DNA of 64,000 nt from Oikopleura dioica (lineage: Eukaryota; Animalia; Chordata). The stretch is taken from the NCBI GenBank assembly GCA_907165135.1, contig OU015566.1:4340001-4404000 (forward strand), read 5' to 3'. The notes below the pieces were generated by a model. It made no database searches. It saw nothing but the letters and a program-made list of their open reading frames with translations, and was not told where the DNA came from. The translations under genes were made by a program, and so were the position numbers. Positions 4,060 through 63,100 of this stretch are shown here, one piece after another. Within the stretch, counting starts at the first letter, position 1, and each line of letters begins with the position of its first letter.

Positions 4060-4215
4060 ATCGACGTGGTAGCCATTTTCAAACAGCGTTTTCTCCCCAT
4101 ACACCCTTAAGATTCCATAAGGTTTTATTTTCAAAATTAAGCTTATGAAGAGTTTTAGAGTAAAAATGAGTTAACGTCTAGATACCCTTAAGTTATCACC
4201 ATCAAATCGTCGAAT
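4060..4215. repeat. Dispersed repeat, second copy at about 46030-46200
   Basis: Both copies share aaacagcgtttt...tacccttaa...gaagagtt(t/c)tagagtaaaaatgagttaac...gatacccttaagt...tcaaatcgtc. Confidence 0.75.
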
Positions 4216-4583
4216 TAACTCACTACGCGGATTTTCATCCGAGCTCTTGAGTACCTAACTCAGGTTTCCGAGTTCAGGGCTCAACTAGATCAGTTTTTGT
4301 CATTTATGCTCCAAAATGTCCACAAAAAGTCTTTGACCTCGAATACTTTATACTTAATTAAAGCATCGCCTTTCCTTTTTTCAATACTTTATTGGCAAAT
4401 TTTAAATGAACTGATCGAAATCGACACTGAAAGACTGTTCTCGAAAATGAATTCATGTTTTTAGCAAAAGAGGACTGAAGCATTTAATATTAGATTAGTT
4501 CCTAACAATGTTCAAATAAATAAAACAGACAGTAAAGACAGTCCTTATAGCCAATTTTCATCGCTGCGTCTGTTGATTCAAAA

Positions 4584-9300: not shown

Positions 9301-10922
9301 CCTTTTTGCCCTAATTATGGCGAAAGTTTCGCCGCGAAACTATTGATTTTTCTTGGTAAAAATTACTCATATCAAGTTTTTGAAGCAATTTTAACCATAG
9401 GACGCATGAAAGAACCAAAAATATGGTGTTTTTTAAAATTTCCGTTTTTCGAAGGGATGAGCTGACGTGGGGGTCCTTAAATAATTATATTATTATTTAA
9501 AATCGACGTGGGCATTTTATGATGAATCTCGCATTAAAAATTGGTAAAATCATGGCTTGAGGATTTCTGGTTTGATTCCGGATGAGCTTTTGATGACGCC
9601 AACTTTCATATCTAAAAAATGATCCTCCTGGCGGTTGGAAATTGTGGCTGATTAGAAACGCGAATCATAATATTTTTTTTCTGAGCTTTCTTTTTGGAGC
9701 AGTCCGGAGAAAAATTGGACTGTTATTTTTCCACCGAAAAAAGTGATTTTCTTACCGTTGTGGTACATTTCCAGTCGATTGAGGCCGTGAGAAAAGTGTC
9801 CCCTGTAATCGGCATGCGCAAGTACTTCCCCCATTTGTAACGATTCCGCTTTTCAGAGGTTTTTTGATGTCATAAATTAGCTTTTTAAAATGTCCAACAG
9901 GATATTTTCTAGCCACGTGGATAAAAAAGGTCTCTTGATCGAAATCTCAATTCGATCCAAAAATTCAAGAGCGCTACGTGTTTTTGAATTTTTTTCCGCT
10001 AGAATTTGGACTACAGTAATTTTTAGGCCGGCATCTGGAAACGACAAAAATTTCGACAAATTTAGCTTTGAAATTTTCAACCAATCAGGACCCTGAATTC
10101 GGCAAACCAACCAATCAGCAGCCGAGAAGCCGCCCACGCAAAATTTGTCGACAATTTTTTGTCGGTTCCAGATGCTATCCCCTAATTTTTTCTTTTGAGT
10201 CGAAAGTGACTGTCATTTTCGTTTTCTAACCCGCGTCAGAGATGTTCCGGGACTGGCCGGATTAGGTCCAACGTGTTATCCCATTTGCAAGTCAGGGCCG
10301 GTAGCTGCCCGCCCAAATAAATAAAAAGTCAAAAGCCCGATTGATCCCCTTTCTCACATTGAGTCGAGAATGGAGCGGGATTTGTTTTGACGGACGGGAT
10401 ATATTTTCATTTTTATCCGAGTCAGGGAGATAAACCCGTGCCGTTAATAACGGTCCGTTATTTTAAACTGCTCAATTTGAAAAAAAATGGCAAGCTCCCT
10501 TATTTTCTCCAACCCAAGAAAATCTGACTTAGGGTGTGAAAAGAGCTAAAATGAACAGCCGCGTAGCGGCTTTTTTGAAAACGAAGCCGCGAAGCGGCTT
10601 CGCAAAAACTCTCAAATAGATCTAAAATTAAGTAATATTTTATCTTAATTTAAGATCTATTTGAAATTTTTGGCGAAGCCGCTTTGCGGCTTCGTATTCA
10701 GAAAAGCCGCTACGCGGCTTTTCATTTTAGGTTTTTTCCCACCCTACGTCGTATTTTCGAGCCCAGCCATTCTGACTCAAAAAACCTTTCCTTCATTAGC
10801 TCCAGCATTCCGAAGAACCCTAGAAATTCATTCTTTGATTTTTCTATTTTCAATAAAAAAAACATGACTCACCTAGTGACAAAGTTCACAATTTCCTTGC
10901 GCTTGACCAGTACTTGCGCCAT
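6350..10922 (-). CDS. Type-2 malate/L-lactate dehydrogenase (Ldh_2; YiaK/AllD/DpkA-like) family oxidoreductase, 11 exons
   Basis: Exons 10922-10873, 10819-10791, 9848-9756, 9611-~9560, 8785-8737, 8634-~8515, ~8225-8060, 7994-7944, 7432-7177, 6926-6773 and 6433-6350. Family motifs: [100 protein letters not shown]. Confidence 0.92.
6475..6754. mobile_element. MITE family B copy (palindromic, AAGCCGC...GCGGCTT core)
   Basis: Terminal inverted repeats gggtcggca...ctgccgaccc, with aaaacct(c/g)ag...gggtctgaaag / ccctgactcaggtttt and internal aagccgc/gcggctt palindromes. Other copies at about 10545, 18865, 19845, 22404, 31435, 33250, 38505 and 40007. Confidence 0.85.
7616..7917. mobile_element. Near-perfect foldback element (about 125-bp arms, about 52-bp spacer) in an Ldh_2 intron
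   Basis: 7616-7739 is the reverse complement of 7792-7917 with few mismatches. Confidence 0.9.
8890..9485. repeat. Dispersed repeat (other copy about 43270-43555) carrying a nested insertion at 8976-9185
   Basis: Both copies share ttctac(g/a)ggtcaa..aacgattttgaggct...tacccttaaaat...ggacgcat...accaaaaatatggtgtttt...gctgacg..gggggtccttaa. Confidence 0.8.
8976..9185. mobile_element. Small TIR element containing TTAGGG-like repeats
   Basis: 24-bp inverted repeats gtagtatggtctcaaaattcggcg / ggccgaattttgaggtcatactac, internal ggttagg/ttagggttagg, and a flanking direct repeat gaaatgga. Confidence 0.7.
10031..10182. mobile_element. MITE family A copy
   Basis: gcatctggaaacgacaaaaatttcgac...tttgtcggttccagatgc inverted termini with internal ccaatcag motifs. 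Confidence 0.8.
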
Positions 10923-53360: not shown

Positions 53361-54103
53361 TACCGTGGTTTTCCATTTTAAGAGCGTTTTTTGGATGACA
53401 GGCCTCGCTCAAATCGCTCTTAGATTGGAAATTTTTCAATCAAGGTAGGATGACAGTGGGATTTTCAATTTTTCCGTTTGACAAATTCTAAATATCGCTC
53501 GGTCATTTTCAATCCTGTGACAACCTTGTGTTCTGCAATTACAAAAAAAAAAAAGATCCGATGTTTTCTTGACGATTTCATCGTCGATCATGATCATCTG
53601 AACATCAAGGAGGAAGATCTAGTGAACAAAGCGAACGAAATCTTCATGAACATGAATCCAGCAATCTTCAAGCGCTCTTGGATCAATACTGGGCTGATCA
53701 AGGAGGAAGAATTCGAAGGAGCTGTTGAAGATTTTGAGGACTTGGATGTTTTGGAAAGTGTGCTGGAGAAAGAAGACGAGGAAGAGCTGGTCGAGCATTT
53801 TCTGGCGCTTCAAATCGATGAAACACGAGTCGCAACCCCGATGGAGATTGAAAAGGAACCTCAAGTTCAAGTGATAGAGAGTGCCGACACTGCGAAGCCT
53901 TCGACTTCAAAATGGCCAGAAAAGCAGTCGAGGATTACAAAATTTTTTAATAAATGATTCACTGTAAGTCTGAAAATTTTTTGATTTTTAATAAAAATCA
54001 TAAAAAACGCTCCTAAACTGGAATTTCGGCAGATGACAACATTTTCAAAATATACGCAAAAACGCTCTTAAAGTGGGCGCTCTTAAAATGGAAAACCACG
54101 GTA
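53361..54103 (+). mobile_element. Internally deleted pogo/Tigger-like DNA transposon with perfect TIRs and TA target duplication
   Basis: ta|ccgtggttttccattttaagagcg (53361-53386) and cgctcttaaaatggaaaaccacgg|ta (54078-54103). The internal ORF 53478-53957 resembles a pogo transposase C-terminus (IFKRSWINTGL, acidic tail, KQSRITKFFNK). Confidence 0.85.
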
Positions 54104-54394
54104 TTCTTTCAAATATAAAAAGAAACAAAAAAAATTAATAAATTTTTTTTTAAAAGTTCATTTTGGATCGCATTAGAAATCGTTTTTCTGGACATAATCT
54201 TACAAGAAAACATATCTGGCTGTGGAAAGGCAGCACTTTTCTTTGAGATTTGTTTAGACGAGCTAATCAAATTAATCCGTATTCGTTTTCGCGGCGTAAC
54301 TCGCCGAGGATAAACCTATCACGAAAATTTTCTCTTCTATTTTTTTCTCAAAACCGAATCAGAACGAAAGAAGCCGGGCTAGCTTTCGTTCGAA

Positions 54395-57300
54395 ATGAGA
54401 AAATTTCTCTTTTCCTTTTTTGCTGCGGGTTTCGCAGAACAGGAACTACCGGTTCCCCCGACAAGAGCTCCCCGTGACTGGCACAATGGTCCTCACGGCG
54501 ATTTGATTTTGACCGATTGGCAGAAAGAGATTCTAGAGAACAGCGGCTTCGACACTTCTACTTACAATGTTGACCCGAATGTGCCCACGCCAAAGGGTCT
54601 TCAAGAAGAGGCGTATTTCAATAAATGGAATGTTTTGAACGCGGCGGGCAAAATTGTCGTTCCTTACTTTTTTCACGAAACGGTAACTGAGAGCTTCCGG
54701 CAGCAGATCCACGATGAACTTGTCGATTTTACCAACTCGCTTGGCTGCATCGAAATGGTCCACGATCCGGACCTGACGTACGCGAATGGAGTCTACGTCA
54801 TCGGCGAAACTTCAAACAAAGAAGATGGTTCAGAAGGATCCGGCTGCTGGTCCTACGTTGGCCGAGCTCCAGGAGGATATAATGGATACGGACACCTTAT
54901 CAATCCGGGCTGGCAAGCGCTAAGATTGCCTGATTGGTGCATCCAACAAGGCGGTGTCCATCACGAATTTCTCCATGCTCTTGGTTTGCTTCACGAACAA
55001 GACCGACCAGATTTCGAGGAGCATTTCGAGCCACATGCTGATGGTGGAGAACTTACGGGCACTGGAAAATGGTTCGATACTGGACATGTTCTCGAACCAA
55101 GCTCGAATTTGATGTATTCAGGTTAGTTTTTCTCAGATTTGAAAAAAAAAAAATTTTTCAAAACGTCTTCAGGCTTCACCCTCAAAAACGGTGGATCATA
55201 CTCTTCCCATGATCTATTAACCACGACGGATGCTATCCAAGTCTGGAAGCAATACTGCGAAGCGAATTTCCCTCAATTTCCTCTTCCCGCTATGACCACC
55301 TGCCCTTCGCCAGACGTTGTCGGCGCCATTCGACCAGTTTTCCACCATCGATTGTGCGATAGTTTCAATAACTGTCTCGGAGGCGAGGATGAAGGAAGCG
55401 AGATTGTGAGATGCGAAACTGACTTGAATGAAAATGGATGCTGCGCGTCCATCTATTCAAGTCTCTTTGGACAGACTTGTGTGTCGAATGGACTTGTCAA
55501 CGATAAGCAGAGCTATCTCTGCCCGAATGGTCATTCACTCAGATGGAGCACAAGCGGCGGTTGGACATATTAGTGAGTTAGAATTTCAAGCAGTAAAGAT
55601 ATTGATTTGTTTTTTTAGTTCCACCGAAACAGGCTTTAGCCGCTACTCATACTCAGGAATCTCTTTTGGCGACACATCAGGAACTTGCGTTCATTCGGAA
55701 GTTCTAGAGGCTACTTTTGTTTGGCAATTGAACAATATGCAGTTGAGCTGCCTTAGGAACGGCGAAAAAACACTGCTGCCGTGCGCAAACAGCACATGCA
55801 ATTTTGAAGTGGCAACCTGCGAGAACAATGCCGAAGAAACTGGATTCACGTGTATTTGTAAAGATGAATTTCCGGGCTGCGATTCTGGAAACCCGAACAC
55901 AACAACAACAACGACGACTACTACAACAACCGCTTCGACAACTACTCTTGGAAGCGGCTCGATGACCAACACAGGCAACATCGACATCTACACTCACGAT
56001 TGGATCAATACCCCGACCATCTATCCCGACTGTCCAACCAACCATAACAATGACAGTATAGTTGATCCATGGGAGACTGTTGAATCCGAATGGATTCCAG
56101 CACCTTCAAACGGATTCATGAACTTACTGAACACGGCAGCTGCAGATGGCGTTTGTGGAGCAGTAAGAGAGGAAATGTTGCCACAAGATCTAGCAAGAAG
56201 ATTCACGAGCAGATCGCTGATTCCGGCGACTTTTGGAGTCAAATGCAGCTTAGTAATTGATGGCATGTGTTCTGAAGCTCACGTGAAATTTTGCTGCTTT
56301 GCAACCGACCCAACTACGACAACAACGACGACAACTACTACGATTTCAACTACAACAACAACTTCATCCACGTCCACCAGCACCAGCACCACCAGTACCA
56401 CCAGCACCACAAGTACCACCACCACCACCACCTCGACCACAACCACAACAACAACAACAACAACCACGACAACATCTACTACGACCACTACAACAACAAC
56501 ACTCGGTGACTTCGATCCTCTAACTGATACCATTCAGTCAGGTCTTTCCGGCTGCACACGAGAAGAAAATTACCCTGGTGCCTTCTTGGCTCGACGAAGA
56601 AACCGGAAAAATAAGCGAAAAAACAAAGGAAAAATGGATGACAAAATTGTGGGAGGAGTCACTGCCGAAGAAAATCAGTGGCCTTGGATAGCGAGACTGT
56701 CGCTTCGAGACGCGAGCGGCGCTACATATTTGTGTGGCGGAACTGTTATCGACAATAACTGGGTCTTGAGCGCCGCTCACTGTTGTCAAGGAATGTCCAC
56801 AATCACTGCCACTTTCAGTGATCTTACTAAATCTACCAGCGAGACGAATGAATTCACCTTAGTTGCGCATCATTTCGAAATCCATCCAGAATATTCTGGA
56901 AGCGGATATGATCTGTGTCTTATTCATTTCATGGAAGACATCGTTTCAGAAGACGTCGATGGTGACGTCGAGCTCGCATGCATTACTGATGCTCTTCCTG
57001 AGCACGGATCAGCCTGTTGGGTTGCTGGATGGGGAACAACTTCTTTCGGTGGCAACACTTCAAACAATCTTTTGCAAGCTGGCGTAAACATCTTCAGCAA
57101 TGAATACTGTCTTGCGAATTCTGCCATCAATTCACTCGAGCCTGATGACATTTGCGCTGGTGTCCCTGACTTAAATGGGGATGGACAAACCGATGGAGGT
57201 GTTGATGCTTGCCAAGGAGACTCAGGAGGTCCTTTGATCTGCAATTATAACGGAAAAGCAACACTCGTTGGAGCAGTCTCTCGAGGAACTGGGTGCGCGT

Positions 57301-60038
57301 ATCAGAATTTCCCTGGTTTGTATTCGTCTATAAACGGATCATACAATTGGATTCAAACGAGAATACAATCGTTTATTACAACAACGACCACAACGACAAC
57401 TACTACAACTACTTCAACAACAACTACAACAACAACCACTACAACAACGACGACGACTCTTGGAACTGGCTCAATCATTAATAACGGGACAATCAGCCTC
57501 TTTACTCATGACTGGATCAATACACCAATTATTTACCCTGATTGCCCAACAAACTACGATAGCGACAACGTTATTGAAGATTGGGAGACTGTTGAGAGTG
57601 AATGGATTCCAGCTCCAAAGGATGGCGTGGTCAATTTACTTAACACTGTGGTAGCCGAATCAGTTTGTGGTTCAATTAGAGCAGGCGATATGGAATTTGA
57701 TGTCACAAGAGGATTTATGAGCAGATCACTCATTCCTTCCTCATTTGGAGTGAAATGCAATCGTGTGATTGATGGACTGTGTTCAGAAGCCGATGTCAAA
57801 TTTTGTTGCTTTGCACCTAATCCAACAACAACAACATCAACTACTACAACAATCACAACCACGACAACTTCCACAACTACCAGTTCTACTACAACTACAA
57901 CTTCTACAACAACGGTAATGAAAGGAGAGCTTTCGTCTCCAAAATGAACAGGAATTTTTCCTATGTTTTCAAAAGAAACTTGCGCATATTTTATAAATAT
58001 TTCAGACAACCACGACAACAACTACCACTACCGAAACAACGACGACAACGAAAACAACAACATCTACAACTTCCACCACAACCACATCAACGACTACCAC
58101 CTCGACGACTACAACAACCACATCAACGACTACAACATCAACGACTACCACTTCAACGACTACAACAACCACATCAACGACTACAACAACTACATCAACG
58201 ACTACCACATCAACGACTACCACTTCAATGACTACAACAACCACATCAACGACTACCACATCAACGACTACAACAACTACATCAACGACTACCACAACTA
58301 CATCAACAACAACCACATCAACGACTACAACATCAACGACTACCACTTCAACGACTACAACAACCACATCAACGACTACAACAACTACATCAACGACTAC
58401 CACATCAACGACTACCACTTCAACGACTACAACAACCACATCAACGACTACAACAACTACATCAACGACTACCACATCAACGACTACCACTTCAATGACT
58501 ACAACAACCACATCAACGACTACCACATCAACGACTACAACAACTACATCAACGACTACCACAACTACATCAACGACTACCACATCAACGACTACAACAA
58601 CTACATCAACGACTACCACAACTACATCAACGACTACCACATCAACGACTACAACAACTACATCAACGACTACCACAACTACATCAACGACTACCACAAC
58701 TACATCAACGACTACCACATCAACGACTACAACAACTACATCAACGACTACCACAACTACATCAACGACTACCACATCAACGACTACAACAACCACATCA
58801 ACGACTACAACAACTACATCAACGACTACCACATCAACGACTACAACAACTACATCAACGACTACCACATCAACGACTACAACAACCACATCAACGACTA
58901 CAACAACTACATCAACGACTACCACATCAACGACTACAACAACTACATCCACGACTACCACATCAACGACTACCACTTCGACGACTACAACAACCACATC
59001 AACGACTACCACATCAACGACAACAACAACTACATCAACGACTACCACATCAACGACTACCACTTCAACGACTACGACGAACACATCAACGACTGCCACT
59101 TCGACGACTACAACAACCACATCAACGACTACAACATCAACGACTACCACATCAACGACTACAACAACCACATCAACGACTACAACATCAACGACTACAA
59201 CAACTACATCAACGACTACCACAACTACATCAACGACAACCACATCAACGACTACAACATCAACGACTACAACAACTACATCAACGACTACCACATCAAC
59301 GACTACCACTTCAACGACTACAACAACCACAACAAGAACTACAACGACGACCACAACAACAACGACAACTACCACTACAACTACTACCACAACCACGATC
59401 AGTTCGACTCCTGCTCCTTGTCTCTTGTCCGACATTTTTGGCAAGGTCGATCTGGCTCGTCTATCATCCTCGACAGCTCCGACGCTCTTCTGATTTCTAG
59501 TAAATTCAAAAGCCAACTTCAGGGTAAATCCCCCGATACACGATCCGCACAATACGTTGGCTTCCTCGCTTTCCAAAGGTTCGTTTATTCTGAAACCATC
59601 AAAAAATTCCCTTTTTAGATCCGCTTGCGGAGATGACTTTATGTTCAAACTCGTTAATGGTGACCTGAGCATCACTATCGTCGATTTCGAACCCGTCTAT
59701 GAGATCCTCAGTTATGGCACTAAATCTGACGGTAGTGCCGCTGGATTTTCTTTCCATCTTACCGAAGTCACTGAGACAAACTATCCTTTCACCGTGAACA
59801 AGCGTGGAGACAGTGGGTTGAAATTTAAAAGGACATCAATCTATTGCTATTTTAAGTCCGAAAGAATATGAAATACGATCAAGTAAACGTCCTGTTTAAC
59901 AATCTGACTGGTATTGCCTGGGCGACCAACCGCGAAGACTGCCTTTTGACCGCTGTCAAAGCTACTGCAGAAACATGGGACAACCAATTCGACCAAAACT
60001 CGATGCAATGCGTCCTCGATGCGAAAACATTCATTTAA
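54395..60038 (+). CDS. Mosaic secreted protease: astacin + LDLa + EGF-like + WxxW + trypsin-like serine protease + WxxW + Thr mucin array + C-terminal domain
   Basis: HEFLHALGLLHEQDRPD zinc motif and SNLMY Met-turn; LCDSFNNCLGGEDE; CENNAEETGFTCIC; two THDWINTP...CSEA(H/D)VKFCC repeats; K|IVGG, SAAHC, DLCLI and GDSGGP. Introns at 55573-55618 and 57915-58005. Probable 1-nt frameshift near 59435; final exon ends DAKTFI* at 60038. Confidence 0.88.
58006..59400 (+). repeat. Coding tandem array of S(T)4-6 units (TCAACGACTAC...), about 1.4 kb
   Basis: 15-21-nt units translate to STTTT/STTTTT/STTTTTT within the protease exon. Confidence 0.95.
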
Positions 60039-60105
60039 GAAGCGGAGAATATTTTTTTCAAAAATAGTTTTATTTATACAAATAAAATTATATTCTGGAA
60101 TAAAC

Positions 60106-63100
60106 CTAAAACTCGCATTCAAACTCATCGTCTTCCTTCTTTTCTTCCATCGATATTTCCGACATTCGGATTGATTTTTTCGACTTTCTCGATTTTCTCG
60201 AGCTCTTTGAAATTGAAGAGCGATTTGACTTGTTTATGCTTGCTTTTTCGTCGTCTGATTCGTCGTCAACAGCTTCGTCGAAGATTGCAGGATCGACGTA
60301 TTCGTAGTAAAAGATGGAAAGAAGGATGAAAATTGAAGTCGTTCCCAACATGATAATCGCGAGGTAAAAATATTCTTGAGCCTTAAATTCATGTTGATTT
60401 TTGAATAGACAAGTGAATCTACCTGATTGTCTCCCATTTGCGCAGCAACCAAGAAAATATCAATGATATTTCCAAAGCAAGTGGTCAGCAGCCAAAAAGA
60501 CTGGATGACTGCTTTCATCGTCTTAGGCGCCTGATTGTAGGCGAATTCCAAGCCTGTGACGGAAACAAGGACTTCAGAAATCGTGATGACAAAGTACTGC
60601 GGAAGAAGTAGAGCGATATTGACAGTGTTTGGATTCGAATCTCGATAGACCGAGACCTTGCATTCGTTTCCATTTGCGACGACCATGACGGTCCAAATCG
60701 AGCCTCCGGAAAGACCGTCTTCGTCCTTGGAGGTTGGATGTAAGATCCTTGAGTATTTGGATATTTCAAACCTGCAAAAAAGTTTCCTCCGATCTGCATC
60801 TCATAATTGGCTCGAGCTGGTCTTCCTTGAATTTATCGCTTAATTGTGACTCATAAGTATTGTCGTCAATCGCTATTAGATCGTCAACAATGACGTCGGC
60901 AGAATCGTAAAGAAACACGTCAAATCCATATGCTCCGCCTTCATTATCTTAAGAAAAATTTTAAATTGATCATCAACGGATGACAGCTACCTTGTTCAAA
61001 CTCCGCAGCATTTCCTGTATTAGCACAGTATGGTCCAGTATGCGTATCGTTTGACTTATCTGTCCTTTCATAAAAATATTCGAATTCGTCTTCTAACATG
61101 TTTTCCTTATACAATCGAGTCTGAATGGGGTTAAGAATTGATATAAAAGAGGATTTCTTACTCTCATGAAGTATTTCGTCGGGTTGACACTGATGACTTT
61201 GACTTGGAGATTTTGAGATTTTTCGTAAGAAGATGGGTACTGGAAATAATCGATTTCCTTCGTGTCTTCATTTCTGTAGACAACGAGGTTGGTAATTTGA
61301 TTTTCGTGGACTTCTACTCCGTTATTTTGGCATTTTGAACAACTAGTAAAAAATTAACGTGAGTTTTTTTCATGAAAGAAACCTGAGAGAAGTCGACTGA
61401 TTCGGAGCGTCACAGGATGATCCTCCTCCTCCACCTCCACCGGAAGTTGTTCCTGTTGTGTTCTTCAGATTTATTGTATATTCGTCATCGTTAATCATCA
61501 AACTAGAAGAATCAGCCTTCTATTCTGTGGATCACTTTTTACCTGAGATTTTCAGGCACCGTTTCATGAAGCCAAGCATGAGTTGGAGTTCTGGCAATTT
61601 TCTCCGATCCAAAAATTTTGTCCAAATCTTCAAGATCAATTGGGAGCGTGAATTCACAAACGTCATCCTCTTTGCAGAACTCTTCGTGATTATCCTCTTG
61701 TTCTTCTTTATACTTAGTGTTCTTCCAGTACTCGCTTGAAACTGTCATTTCTTCTTCCCAAAGAGCATTTGTGACGACAAGAGCATTGTCTGAGCCGAAA
61801 TCGGGGACGAGGGTTAGGTCAGATTGGATAGCCAGCTGGACGAAACCGGAAATGACGAAGGCGAGGGCGGCGATGACTTGACCTGCACACATTCTCTAGA
61901 AAGAAGAATAAGAAGAGTGAAACTTTCAAAAAAAAAATCTAGTCGAATAAGTCGAAAATCTAGTCGAATAAGTGGAAAAAAATCACTATCACTACGACTA
62001 AATTTCGAATTTTCGACTAATTTTCGACTTTTCCACTAATTTTCGACTTTTTCGACTAATTTTCGACTTTTTCGACTTATTTTCGATTTTCTCGATTAAT
62101 TTTCGACTTTCGACTAATTTTCGACTTTTCGACTATTTCGACTAATTTTCGACTCTTCGACTATAAATCGATTAAGTCGACTCGACTCGACTAGCGATTT
62201 TCAAAAACGCTTTCGAGTCGACACGACTCGACTTCTGATTTTCAGCTGTGATTTAGAACCCTGAGTGAAAGAAGAGGAAAGCCTTACTTACCCTCAGTGG
62301 CGTCATCTTGACAAAAATATTCAAGCAAGGGTAGATAAACAACTCAAAGCAGGGCAAAAGAAGTAGGATGAAAACCGAGTTGAAAAGTTGAACTTGATCT
62401 GGCCGCATTTTGAAGCTCTTCCCCCAGTACCCGTCCATCTGAGTAGCTGTCAGTGTCCAGCGGCTGCCTTGCATGTCAAACAGCGCCCAGAACATGATAA
62501 TGGGAAGGTACATGACGACAATCGGCCACACCCACTTTGCATCTCGGATCATCCAACTTGGATACTTGCTCTTGTCGGCGTAGGACATCAAATCTGCATC
62601 TGGATCTCGCTCTTTTTTGTCAGTTTTGCAGCGATTTCGGAGCGCGTTCCAAGTAGCGCCGAGAAATAGGGAAAAGACATTTTGCCCCGTTGGAGGTTTT
62701 CGAATGTAGTACGGAGTTCCAACGAGGAAAAGAACGAGAGCAACCGCCATCAAAATCGATGGAACGGCAAAAGCAAGGACGTAGCTCAAGTCGCGAAGAA
62801 TGGGAGTTATGAAGGTGGAGCAAAGACTTCCAGCGTTGATGGCGAAGTAGAAGACGGTGAAAAAGGAGGCGATGTGTTTTCGGCCCCGCTCAGTGGAATC
62901 ATCGAACTGATCACCTCCAAGAGTCGACACACAAGGCTTGATTCCTCCCGTTCCGCAGGCAATGATGAAAAGAGCCGCCAATGCGAGTCCCATATTCACG
63001 GCTTGTCCAACTCCCGAATCGTCAAATTCCACCGCCGAAACGGCCATCAGCGCCATTCCAGCACAGTAAACAATCGAAAGGTAGAAGATGGTTTTGTACT

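What the first reader, a model, noticed from the sequence alone, without database searches (positions are those of the whole stretch)
54395..60038. Single polypeptide joining an astacin metalloprotease and a trypsin-like serine protease on a mucin scaffold
Seen: one spliceable frame has signal/pro region, astacin with intact HExxHxxGxxH and Met-turn, LDLa, EGF-like, Thr linker, WxxW-type domain, Thr linker, a polybasic RRRNRKNKRKNK..DDK|IVGG activation segment, trypsin with an intact His/Asp/Ser triad and Asp at S1 (DACQGDSGGP), a second WxxW, ~460 aa of Thr/Ser, and a C-terminal domain. Established: astacins and trypsins normally occur in separate proteins, and both classes act as hatching or matrix-remodelling enzymes. 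Inference: a two-mechanism protease cassette, possibly self-activating or split by furin at the polybasic site, tethered in mucous or cellulose matrix (house turnover, hatching or digestion). It lies tail-to-tail with a peptide transporter.
Basis: partly seen in the sequence, partly recalled or inferred. Interest (0 to 1): 0.76.

Follow-up and report, generated by a model that had tools for sequence, protein, structure and literature searches.

The report
Oikopleura house-type astacin–trypsin mosaic protease
This is a real gene of the tunicate Oikopleura dioica that puts a zinc protease (astacin) and a trypsin-like protease on one secreted, mucin-like protein, but it belongs to a published family of "house" proteins (oikosin 24) in which the same pairing is already on record, so it is a new family member, not a new kind of enzyme.

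Summary
Window 54395-60038 (+) is one gene with short GT..AG introns. It encodes about 1,790 aa: signal peptide, pro-astacin, Cys-rich and EGF-like modules, Thr linkers, two copies of an unassigned 6-Cys domain, a trypsin zymogen (K|IVGG, His/Asp/Ser, Asp189), a Thr/Ser tract of about 480 aa and an unassigned C-terminal domain.

The key doubt was whether the TAG at 55571-55573 ends an astacin-only gene. This is settled for the ortholog. The North-Atlantic O. dioica locus (L001) has an intron at the same codon position and phase. An intron-less environmental transcript contig (L003) reads through it in one ORF from the start Met, through astacin and trypsin, into the Thr run.

The N-terminal 370 aa are 65-75% identical to oikosin 24g (UniProt E4XR50), which carries astacin, CUB, trypsin and ZP domains. 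Hosp et al. [quoted passage not shown] Astacin-trypsin fusions are also noted in cnidarians, helminths and a rotifer.

- The "WxxW" label is unsupported.
- The Met-turn is LMYS, not SIMHY.
- A pro-segment cysteine argues against furin splitting the halves.
- A 1-nt frame break at 59435-59439 precedes the C-terminal domain.

No reads from this lineage covered the gene. Verdict: new member of a known kind.

The parts
54395..60038 (+). Whole coding span of the gene. Six exons: 54395-55121, 55173-55572, 55619-57914, 58006-59578, 59619-59812, 59857-60038. About 1,790 aa and about 190 kDa unglycosylated.
   Evidence: Reading of splice sites. Every exon piece has a counterpart in the same order in the Bergen locus L001, at 57-74% aa identity. 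Mass summed from the separate pieces.
54395..54436 (+). Signal peptide (MRKFLFSFFAAGFA).
   Evidence: Hydrophobic N-terminus read. The equivalent N-termini in L003, Oik24g and L005 align. No predictor was run.
54491..54511 (+). Astacin pro-peptide motif PHGDLIL, the counterpart of the FxGD zinc-blocking aspartate.
   Evidence: Aligns with NTFEGDM of the canonical rotifer astacin P0038 and is invariant in all Oik24-type sequences.
54593..54598 (+). Predicted maturation site of the astacin (K|G of PK|GLQEE). The basic residue is conserved in the homologues (K or R, then GL).
   Evidence: Alignment A5 gives K|GL in L003 and Oik24g, R|GL in L005 and R|GV in P0038. The cleavage itself is inferred.
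54596..55258 (+). Astacin catalytic domain, interrupted by intron 55122-55172. Zinc motif at 54962-55012; variant Met-turn SSNLMYS at 55100-55120; closing Cys of KQYC at 55256-55258.
   Evidence: Pfam PF01400, E 8e-13. PDB astacin 1AST, E 7e-6, with GSGCWSYVGR and HExxHxxGxxHE aligned. All four canonical Cys are present. Intron 1 is absent in L001 and L003, where MYSGFSLKNGG is continuous.
55355..55570 (+). LDLa-like half-motif (55355-55414) and a Cys-rich stretch ending in GGWTY.
   Evidence: 73-75% identical to L001 and Oik24g. No Pfam hit at E<=10. The LDLa label rests on the call made for the family by Hosp et al..
55573..55618 (+). Junction intron between the astacin half and the trypsin half. 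46 nt, GTGAGT..TTTTTAG, phase 2. If retained, TAG at 55571-55573 ends an astacin-only product.
   Evidence: The same position and phase occur in L001 (9915-9963) and in the Oik24g gene L002. Transcript contig L003 has it removed exactly.
55782..55880 (+). EGF-like module.
   Evidence: Pfam EGF_3, E 0.014, below the cut-off. Homologous to the EGF-like module of Oik24g.
55950..56312 (+). Unassigned 6-Cys domain, copy A, flanked by Thr linkers 55896-55946 and 56313-~56500.
   Evidence: Alignment A1, with 6 invariant Cys. No Pfam, hhalign, atlas or usable AF2 result. A marine metatranscriptome contig covers 55765-56101 at about 97% identity.
56547..56645 (+). Trypsin pro-segment: conserved Cys (SGCTREENYP), polybasic run 56592-56633, and the activation bond K|I at 56643-56648.
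   Evidence: The motif is conserved in L001 (with RRNR), Oik24g and P0002.
56646..57374 (+). Trypsin-like S1 domain. His57 at 56778-56780, Asp102 at 56910-56912, Asp189 at 57204-57206, Ser195 at 57222-57224.
   Evidence: Pfam PF00089, E 4e-44, full length. PDB plasma kallikrein E 2e-39 with the alignment shown. Coordinates.
57462..57824 (+). Unassigned 6-Cys domain, copy B. It is absent from the Bergen ortholog.
   Evidence: 63% identical to copy A. L001 and L003 pass from trypsin straight into the Thr run.
57825..59412 (+). Mucin-like Thr/Ser tract, interrupted by intron 57915-58005. Built of imperfect repeats with a 36-nt period.
   Evidence: 97% T+S over 476 aa.
59435..59439 (+). T5 homopolymer where the reading frame shifts by one base relative to the ortholog (..SDIF in frame 1, WQGR.. 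in frame 0).
   Evidence: The downstream pieces remain open and 62-63% identical to L001. Not checked with reads.
59413..60035 (+). Unassigned C-terminal domain, about 175 aa with 4 Cys, spread over three exons.
   Evidence: Conserved in L001. No Pfam hit. Never joined, so never folded.

Best explanation
This is one protein-coding gene of Oikopleura dioica. It belongs to the oikosin 24 family of secreted house proteins.

Shown. A single mRNA encodes, in order: signal peptide, pro-astacin, LDLa-like, Cys-rich and EGF-like modules, a Thr linker, a 6-Cys domain, a second Thr linker, a trypsin zymogen, a third Thr linker, a second 6-Cys domain, a mucin tract of about 500 aa, and a C-terminal domain. 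Single-mRNA status is demonstrated only for the ortholog.

Inferred mechanism:
1. The protein is secreted as a doubly latent zymogen. It is held in an extracellular matrix by its heavily O-glycosylated stalk and its terminal domain. By family analogy that matrix is most likely the house rudiment or inlet filter made by the giant Eisen cells.
2. The trypsin domain (Asp189) is activated by cleavage after Lys at DDK|IVGG. This bond is itself a tryptic site, so activation can spread from molecule to molecule.
3. After activation the trypsin domain stays disulfide-tethered to the N-terminal part through the pro-segment cysteine.
4. Active trypsin then removes the astacin pro-peptide at the conserved K|GL site, as trypsin does for meprins.
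5. The result is two proteases of different specificity fixed at one spot in the matrix.
For: One gene, one ORF:
- All introns are canonical and restore the reading frame.
- The junction intron keeps the same codon position and phase in L001 and in the Oik24g gene L002.
- L003 lacks all four 5' introns of L001. It reads as one ORF of more than 1,080 codons, from Met through astacin and trypsin.
- Downstream of the junction the first Met is not conserved between the window and L001 and is not followed by a signal-like sequence, so a separate secreted trypsin gene is implausible.

Family:
- Exons 1 and 2 are 65% and 75% identical to Oik24g. The trypsin domain is 59% identical.
- Oik24g has Astacin, three CUB matches, Trypsin and ZP and is named Oikosin 24g in UniProt.
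[quoted passage not shown] Oik24g and Oik24h give serine-protease best hits.

Catalytic residues are intact in both domains.

Activation logic:
- The [KR]|GL site and the HGD motif are conserved across paralogues.
- K|IVGG or R|IIGG is present in all trypsin-bearing members.
- The family-specific Glu that binds the new astacin N-terminus is present (for the rule).

Transcription in nature: a 343-nt marine metatranscriptome contig matches exon 3 at about 97%.
Against: - There is no transcript evidence from the window's own lineage. Three bulk RNA-seq runs gave no unique coverage. This may reflect stage or lineage divergence and is uninformative.
- The Met-turn has Tyr at +1, not +2. The EXXRXDRD motif is only partly kept (EQDRPDFE). 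Pfam aligns only the first half of the astacin model, and the AF2 model was too poor to judge. Astacin activity is therefore not assured.
- The 1-nt frame break at 59435-59439 would remove the C-terminal domain if it is real.
- Tissue of expression, matrix tethering, the disulfide link and the order of activation are all inferred.
- Whether this gene's product was among the eight published Oik24 proteins could not be settled. By the assembly the Bergen ortholog is about 161 kDa. The published masses are 149 kDa for Oik24g and 172 kDa for Oik24h.
Confidence: 0.8

Rival explanations
1. Two genes. An astacin gene ends at the TAG 55571-55573. A separate downstream trypsin gene follows, perhaps as an operon partner that receives a spliced leader at the 55618 acceptor.
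For: An in-frame TAG sits at the exon-intron boundary. O. dioica uses operons and trans-splicing (general knowledge). The public Bergen annotation calls only a 432-aa trypsin protein, P0001, that starts just after the junction.
Against: Transcript contig L003 joins the two halves precisely at the predicted splice in the ortholog. The downstream part has no conserved start codon and no signal peptide, yet it is a disulfide-rich, mucin-linked extracellular protein. Oik24g has the same donor and a continuous published model. P0001 is plainly a truncated model, because it also skips the Thr linkers.
Confidence: 0.04
2. In this lineage the gene is decaying or C-terminally truncated. The 1-nt frameshift at 59435-59439 is real, so the protein ends 18 codons later (TGA 59491-59493) and lacks the C-terminal domain, or the locus is an unexpressed pseudogene.
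For: The frame break relative to L001. No unique RNA-seq coverage in three runs.
Against: About 5.6 kb of otherwise intact ORF, with all catalytic residues and splice sites in place. The three downstream exon pieces remain open and are as conserved as the rest of the gene, 62-63% against 57-74%. The break lies in a homopolymer, a typical consensus error of long-read assemblies. A near-identical sequence is transcribed in a marine sample.
Confidence: 0.1
3. It is a digestive or gut-mucus enzyme, not a house protein: a mucin-anchored pair of digestive proteases secreted by the gut or endostyle.
For: Trypsins and astacins are classic digestive enzymes. The DDK|IVGG site resembles the trypsinogen activation peptide. 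Mucin stalks are typical of gut surfaces. Trypsins and metallopeptidases rise in gut cell clusters after tailshift.
Against: The closest relatives are oikosin 24 proteins found in the house proteome and expressed in Eisen giant cells. Paralogues carry ZP domains typical of matrix assembly.
Confidence: 0.15

Closest known systems
Oikosin 24g of O. dioica (UniProt E4XR50; CBY12286.1 / CCG47863.1; Hosp et al. 2012, PMC3390340)
   Same: The same N-terminal module: signal peptide, pro-astacin with HGD, HEFLHAxGLLHEQDRPD, the LMYS Met-turn, and the LDLa-like, Cys-rich and EGF-like parts. It is 65-75% identical. The phase-2 intron after GW.Y is the same. The trypsin pro-segment with its conserved Cys is the same, and the Asp189 trypsin is 59% identical.
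   Different: Oik24g places CUB domains around the trypsin and ends in a ZP domain. The window gene has two unassigned 6-Cys domains, long Thr linkers, a mucin tract of about 500 aa and a different C-terminal domain. Oik24g activates at R|IIGG without a polybasic run.
Oik24a-f type paralogues (for example the environmental locus L005)
   Same: The same astacin, LDLa-like and EGF-like module, the same junction intron, and the same [KR]|GL maturation site.
   Different: No trypsin domain. A short linker is followed by a ZP-like C-terminus.
Adineta ricciae predicted protein P0038 (astacin - mucin linker - WxxW - mucin linker - trypsin)
   Same: The same order of two protease classes, separated by Thr-rich linkers and a small Cys domain.
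   Different: Its astacin is canonical (full Pfam match, SVMHY) and its WxxW domain is genuine. Only 27-38% identical, so probably an independent fusion.
Cnidarian and helminth astacins with trypsin-like domains (Babonis et al. 2019, bioRxiv 645952; Gomis-Rüth and Stöcker 2023, PMC9848320)
   Same: The published record shows that astacin catalytic domains can be followed by a trypsin-like serine peptidase domain.
   Different: Different phyla and different accessory domains. No sequences were compared here.
Meprins and crayfish astacin; mosaic S1 proteases (enteropeptidase, TMPRSS, plasma kallikrein)
   Same: Meprin and astacin zymogens are matured by tryptic cleavage (my knowledge). Mosaic S1 proteases stay disulfide-linked to their stem after activation. 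Kallikrein, factor XI and enteropeptidase are the best PDB matches.
   Different: In those systems the astacin and its activating trypsin are separate gene products, and the S1 stems are membrane-anchored or apple/SEA/LDLa/SRCR-type.

Membership tests
Astacin metallopeptidases (MEROPS M12A, Pfam PF01400) | Profile match above the curated threshold | tested here: met
   48.9 bits against a cut-off of 22.5, E 8e-13. Only profile positions 6-105 of 189 align. PDB astacin E 7e-6.
Astacin metallopeptidases (MEROPS M12A, Pfam PF01400) | Zinc motif HEXXHXXGXXH followed by the family-specific Glu and XXRXDRD | tested here: met
   HEFLHALGLLH-E-QDRPDFE at 54962-55012. The three His, the catalytic Glu and the family Glu are present. 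The tail is RPDFE instead of RxDRD.
Astacin metallopeptidases (MEROPS M12A, Pfam PF01400) | SIMHY Met-turn with the zinc-binding Tyr two residues after Met | tested here: not met
   The sequence is S-N-L-M-Y-S. Met is present but Tyr is at +1. The variant is conserved in every Oik24-type sequence (rule). The AF2 model was too poor to see where the Tyr lies.
Astacin metallopeptidases (MEROPS M12A, Pfam PF01400) | Pro-peptide with the zinc-blocking Asp (FxGD), and two conserved disulfides (C42-C198, C64-C84) | tested here: met
   PHGD aligns with FEGD of a canonical astacin. All four Cys are present at the expected motifs.
Trypsin-like serine proteases (S1A, Pfam PF00089) | Full-length profile match, the His57/Asp102/Ser195 triad, an IVGG N-terminus and Asp189 | tested here: met
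   151 bits over profile positions 1-220 of 220. The residue-by-residue alignment to kallikrein shows AAHC, D-L-C-L-I, DACQGDSGGP and SRGTGCA.
Oikosin 24 family (Hosp et al. 2012) | Shared ZnMc-LDLa-EGF-like N-terminal module homologous to named members | tested here: met
   65% identity over 228 aa and 75% over 132 aa to Oikosin 24g. Shared intron position. The Oik24a probe primer encodes WIDTGHPF at the site of the window's WFDTGHVL.
Oikosin 24 family (Hosp et al. 2012) | [quoted passage not shown] | not testable with these tools
   No expression data for this gene. The reads laid gave no unique coverage.
Mucin-2 WxxW / CysD domain (Pfam PF13330) | Profile match and a WxxW motif | tested here: not met
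   No hit at E<=10. hhalign against the rotifer WxxW domain gives probability 1.6%. No WxxW in alignment A1.
LDL-receptor class A (Pfam PF00057) | Profile match with six Cys and the DxSDE calcium cage | tested here: not met
   No Pfam hit at E<=10. Only the half-motif CDSFNNCLGGEDEGSE is present. Hosp et al. label the family LDLa using SMART.
EGF-like (Pfam PF12947 / PF00008) | Profile match above threshold | tested here: inconclusive
   EGF_3 scores 16.1 bits against a cut-off of 28.5, E 0.014. The Cys pattern is compatible.

The most novel reading that the evidence does not exclude
The trypsin-bearing Oik24 members (this gene, Oik24g and Oik24h) are the built-in activators of the whole oikosin-24 astacin family. 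All members are secreted together as latent zymogens into the folded house rudiment. Tryptic auto-activation at K/R|I(V/I)GG spreads and then cuts the conserved [KR]|GL bond of every astacin pro-peptide. A burst of matrix proteolysis is thereby triggered locally, timed to inlet-filter unfolding or house inflation. In this gene the mucin stalk, the two 6-Cys domains and the orphan C-terminal domain fix the activator at a defined place in the cellulose/glycoprotein mesh.
Probability: 0.2. Interest if true: 0.6.

Novelty: new member of a known kind. Interest (0 to 1): 0.32.

Why it matters
The find corrects public annotation. The North-Atlantic ortholog is deposited only as a 432-aa trypsin fragment (CBY06791.1). 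In the searches whose length window would have admitted a full-length model, none turned up.

It adds a distinct architecture to the oikosin 24 family: 6-Cys domains, a giant mucin stalk and a new C-terminal domain in place of CUB and ZP domains. This shows that one conserved pro-astacin module has been combined with different matrix-anchoring tails in larvaceans.

It also offers a concrete, testable idea for how latent house proteases could be switched on: tryptic sites at both activation bonds. House inflation is the defining innovation of larvaceans, and its biochemistry is almost unknown.

It does not reveal a new enzyme class or a new principle.

Tried and rejected
1. Reads. Three bulk oligo-dT RNA-seq runs labelled with the species gave only cross-mapping on Thr-codon repeats and no unique coverage. 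One marine metatranscriptome gave a 343-nt exon-3 contig. This says nothing about the junction.

2. My first model put an intron at 59446-59522 with a 56-nt exon. I rejected it when the Bergen ortholog read the same residues continuously. A 1-nt break at a T5 run explains the data better.

3. WxxW/CysD identity of the 6-Cys domain. Pfam at E<=10, hhalign, AF2 (pLDDT 44) and the ESM atlas (best score 0.85, to bacterial TraN, below the useful range) all failed. I ran no fold search on so poor a model.

4. AF2 on the pro-astacin module of L003 with a 7-row alignment gave pLDDT 43.5. It is unusable for the Met-turn question.

5. The exhaustive HMMER search with exon 3 returned multi-trypsin proteins and P0001 but no full-length model. 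None of the eight top hits I scanned had an astacin domain.

6. A word-index search with the Oik24g astacin module (candidates of 747-2,378 aa) found only Oik24g itself.

7. The first metagenome scan, with the single exon-2 sequence, found nothing. The second, with a three-sequence alignment, found L003-L007.

8. I could not decide whether the Bergen ortholog is the published Oik24h. HE774621 was not retrievable, and P0056, a five-trypsin O. dioica protein, shares no astacin module.

9. So the complete protein and the three-exon C-terminal domain were neither searched nor folded as a whole.

Full report
**What is in the window**

ORF listing and direct reading of 54200-60300 show a plus-strand gene starting at ATG 54395 and ending at TAA 60036-60038. 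The open frames are linked by short introns with GT..AG ends, as is typical of Oikopleura:
- 55122-55172 (51 nt)
- 55573-55618 (46 nt, GTGAGT..TTTTTAG)
- 57915-58005 (91 nt)
- 59579-59618 (40 nt)
- 59813-59856 (44 nt)

Pfam finds Astacin in exon 1 (E 8e-13) and a full-length Trypsin domain in exon 3 (E 4e-44). The astacin piece aligns to crayfish astacin across GSGCWSYVGR and HExxHxxGxxHE. The trypsin piece aligns end to end with plasma kallikrein, factor XI and enteropeptidase. That alignment shows the IVGG N-terminus, the His/Asp/Ser triad and Asp189. Exon 4 is a 476-aa tract that is 97% Thr+Ser, built of degenerate 36-nt repeats. On the minus strand, tail-to-tail, lies a POT-family peptide transporter.

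**Organism and ortholog**

The best protein hits are from Oikopleura dioica. An earlier scan note calls this genome the Okinawan lineage; I did not test that. The closest hit is CBY06791.1 (P0001), a 432-aa 'trypsin' model from the North-Atlantic (Bergen) assembly. Its locus L001 contains unannotated counterparts of every exon piece of the window gene, in the same order, at 57-74% amino-acid identity. P0001 is a truncated model that starts just after the junction and skips the Thr linkers.

**Is it one polypeptide?**

Three lines of evidence answer it.

1. In L001 the astacin half ends ..GWYY(A), followed by GTGAGT. A 49-nt intron (9915-9963) is in the same codon position and phase as the window's 46-nt intron. 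The frame then continues into a homologous Ser/Tyr-rich segment before the EGF-like module. The intron sequences themselves share little beyond the splice-site ends and one short T-rich block.

2. The gene for oikosin 24g (L002) has the same phase-2 donor after GWLY(A).

3. A second metagenome scan, with an alignment of exon-2 homologues, retrieved JGI contig Ga0314683_10009675 (L003, 3,265 nt). It is collinear with L001 at 98-100% identity outside the Thr repeats, but it lacks all four 5' introns. These include 9915-9963, removed exactly at the predicted bond (..tattacgc|cgtaagc..). Its translation is a single ORF of more than 1,080 codons. It runs from MRKFWF.. through the astacin, EGF-like module, 6-Cys domain, RRNR..DDAK|IVGG and trypsin into the Thr run.

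So for the ortholog, one processed mRNA carries both proteases. For the window gene the same conclusion rests on strict conservation of the exon-intron structure. It also rests on the lack of a conserved start codon or signal peptide downstream of the junction. Reads from the window's own lineage did not help. Three bulk RNA-seq runs gave only cross-mapping on Thr repeats. One marine metatranscriptome gave a 343-nt contig on exon 3 at about 97% identity.

**Family**

The first about 370 residues are 65% (exon 1) and 75% (exon 2) identical to P0047. P0047 is CBY12286.1 / CCG47863.1, named Oikosin 24g in UniProt as E4XR50. Pfam on P0047 gives Astacin, three CUB matches, Trypsin and a ZP-C domain.

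Hosp et al. 2012 (PMC3390340) describe eight paralogues, Oik24a-h:
- All have a Zn-metalloprotease domain of astacin type plus LDLa and EGF-like modules.
- Table S4 lists serine-protease best hits for Oik24g (149 kDa) and Oik24h (172 kDa).
- The legend of Fig. S4 lists Tryp_SPc and CUB.

An environmental paralogue, L005, shows the trypsin-less form with a ZP-like tail.

The pairing is also recorded outside tunicates:
- A review of astacins notes trypsin-like serine peptidase domains downstream of the catalytic domain in helminths and cnidarians (PMC9848320).
- Babonis et al. date a trypsin-astacin association to Cnidaria (bioRxiv 645952).
- A bdelloid rotifer protein has canonical astacin - WxxW - trypsin.

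The architecture is therefore already known. What is new is this member, with 6-Cys domains, a long mucin stalk and an unassigned C-terminal domain in place of CUB and ZP. In the one search whose length window could have admitted a full-length model (query up to 1,780 aa), none appeared. One search (747-2,378 aa) found only Oik24g. Searches also gave none.

**Corrections to the anatomy**

- *6-Cys domains.* The two 'WxxW-type' domains are duplicates of a 120-aa module with six invariant Cys. The module also occurs in an Okinawan paralogue, P0004. It has no WxxW motif and no Pfam hit. It does not resemble a true WxxW domain by hhalign, gives no confident AF2 model and has no atlas neighbour. 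I call it unassigned. Copy B is missing from the Bergen ortholog.
- *LDLa and EGF.* LDLa is only a half-motif and EGF is sub-threshold.
- *Astacin domain.* It keeps the zinc motif, the family Glu, all four Cys and a pro-peptide HGD that aligns with FEGD. Its Met-turn is LMYS, with Tyr one residue after Met instead of two (rule). Only the N-terminal half matches the Pfam profile. This variant is shared by all Oik24-type sequences. Activity is plausible but unproven.
- *Frame break.* Relative to L001, which reads ..GIFWQGRFGSS.. in one frame, the window changes frame between ..SDIF and WQGRSGSS.. at a run of five T (59435-59439). The downstream pieces are open and as conserved as the rest of the gene. 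I therefore favour a homopolymer error in the assembly over a real truncation, but I could not check it.

**Mechanism (inferred)**

- Both activation bonds follow a basic residue. One is K|IVGG (R|IIGG in Oik24g). The other is the bond before the predicted mature astacin N-terminus: K|GL here, K|GL or R|GL in paralogues, and R|GV in the rotifer astacin.
- With Asp189 in the S1 pocket, the trypsin domain could activate its neighbours and then the astacin, as trypsin does for meprins (my knowledge).
- A conserved Cys (SGCTREENYP) lies upstream of the polybasic run. The S1 domain has eleven Cys, eight of them in the four standard disulfides. One of the three extra Cys sits at or near position 122. 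This suggests the two-chain, disulfide-tethered arrangement of kallikrein and TMPRSS-type enzymes.
- Cleavage at the conserved RRNR and at K|I would then release only a short basic peptide.
- The mucin stalk and the terminal domain would hold the enzyme in a matrix. Family membership points to the house inlet filter, where Hosp et al. suggested proteoglycan shedding during inflation. A gut role is not excluded.

**Limits**

So the whole protein and the three-exon C-terminal domain were not searched or folded. Whether the Bergen ortholog (about 161 kDa from the assembly) is the published Oik24h could not be decided.

**Verdict**

The gene is real and correctly described, and its single-mRNA status is shown in the ortholog. 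It is a new, unannotated member of the known oikosin 24 family, whose astacin-trypsin pairing is already on record. Interest is moderate to low.

Noticed in passing
window 54230-54394; L001 8352-8516: The 161 nt upstream of the start codon are 68% identical between the window and the Bergen ortholog, about as conserved as the coding DNA. A perfect 17-nt block, GCTAGCTTTCGTTCGAA, abuts the ATG. The Oik24g upstream region does not share it. It is possibly a conserved promoter or 5'UTR element.
   Followed up: partly
L002 4215-4445 (Bergen Oik24g gene): The deposited Oik24g model uses a 230-nt (4215-4444) intron after GWLY(A). An upstream acceptor (..TTATTACAG) would instead give a 53-nt (4215-4267) intron and keep an open, in-frame 59-codon segment. 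That segment is homologous to the window's exon-3 start (..SGVCVHQALSDPNFVW..). The published model may therefore miss a coding segment, or the gene may be alternatively spliced.
   Followed up: partly
window 55571-55573; L001 9916-9918; L002 ~4216-4218: In all three genes, retention of the junction intron would end translation at once or after one more codon (TAG, TGA, TAA), giving an astacin-only protein. This may simply follow from a phase-2 GTGA/GTAA donor, but it is a ready-made switch between one-protease and two-protease products.
   Followed up: no
P0004 (CAG5094194.1, OKI2018_I69 XSR g13334): An Okinawan paralogue pairs the same 6-Cys domain with a trypsin-like domain. That domain seems to lack the IVGG N-terminus and the GDSGGP serine motif (it reads ..TEHGSPVF..). 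It is possibly a dead-protease relative.
   Followed up: no
window 53478-53957 (+): An acidic 159-aa ORF just upstream of the gene has no Pfam match. I did not examine it further.
   Followed up: no
window 57462-57824 versus L001/L003: The second 6-Cys domain, after the trypsin domain, is present in the window gene but absent from the Bergen ortholog's genome and transcript. This is a lineage difference in domain content within one orthologous gene.
   Followed up: partly
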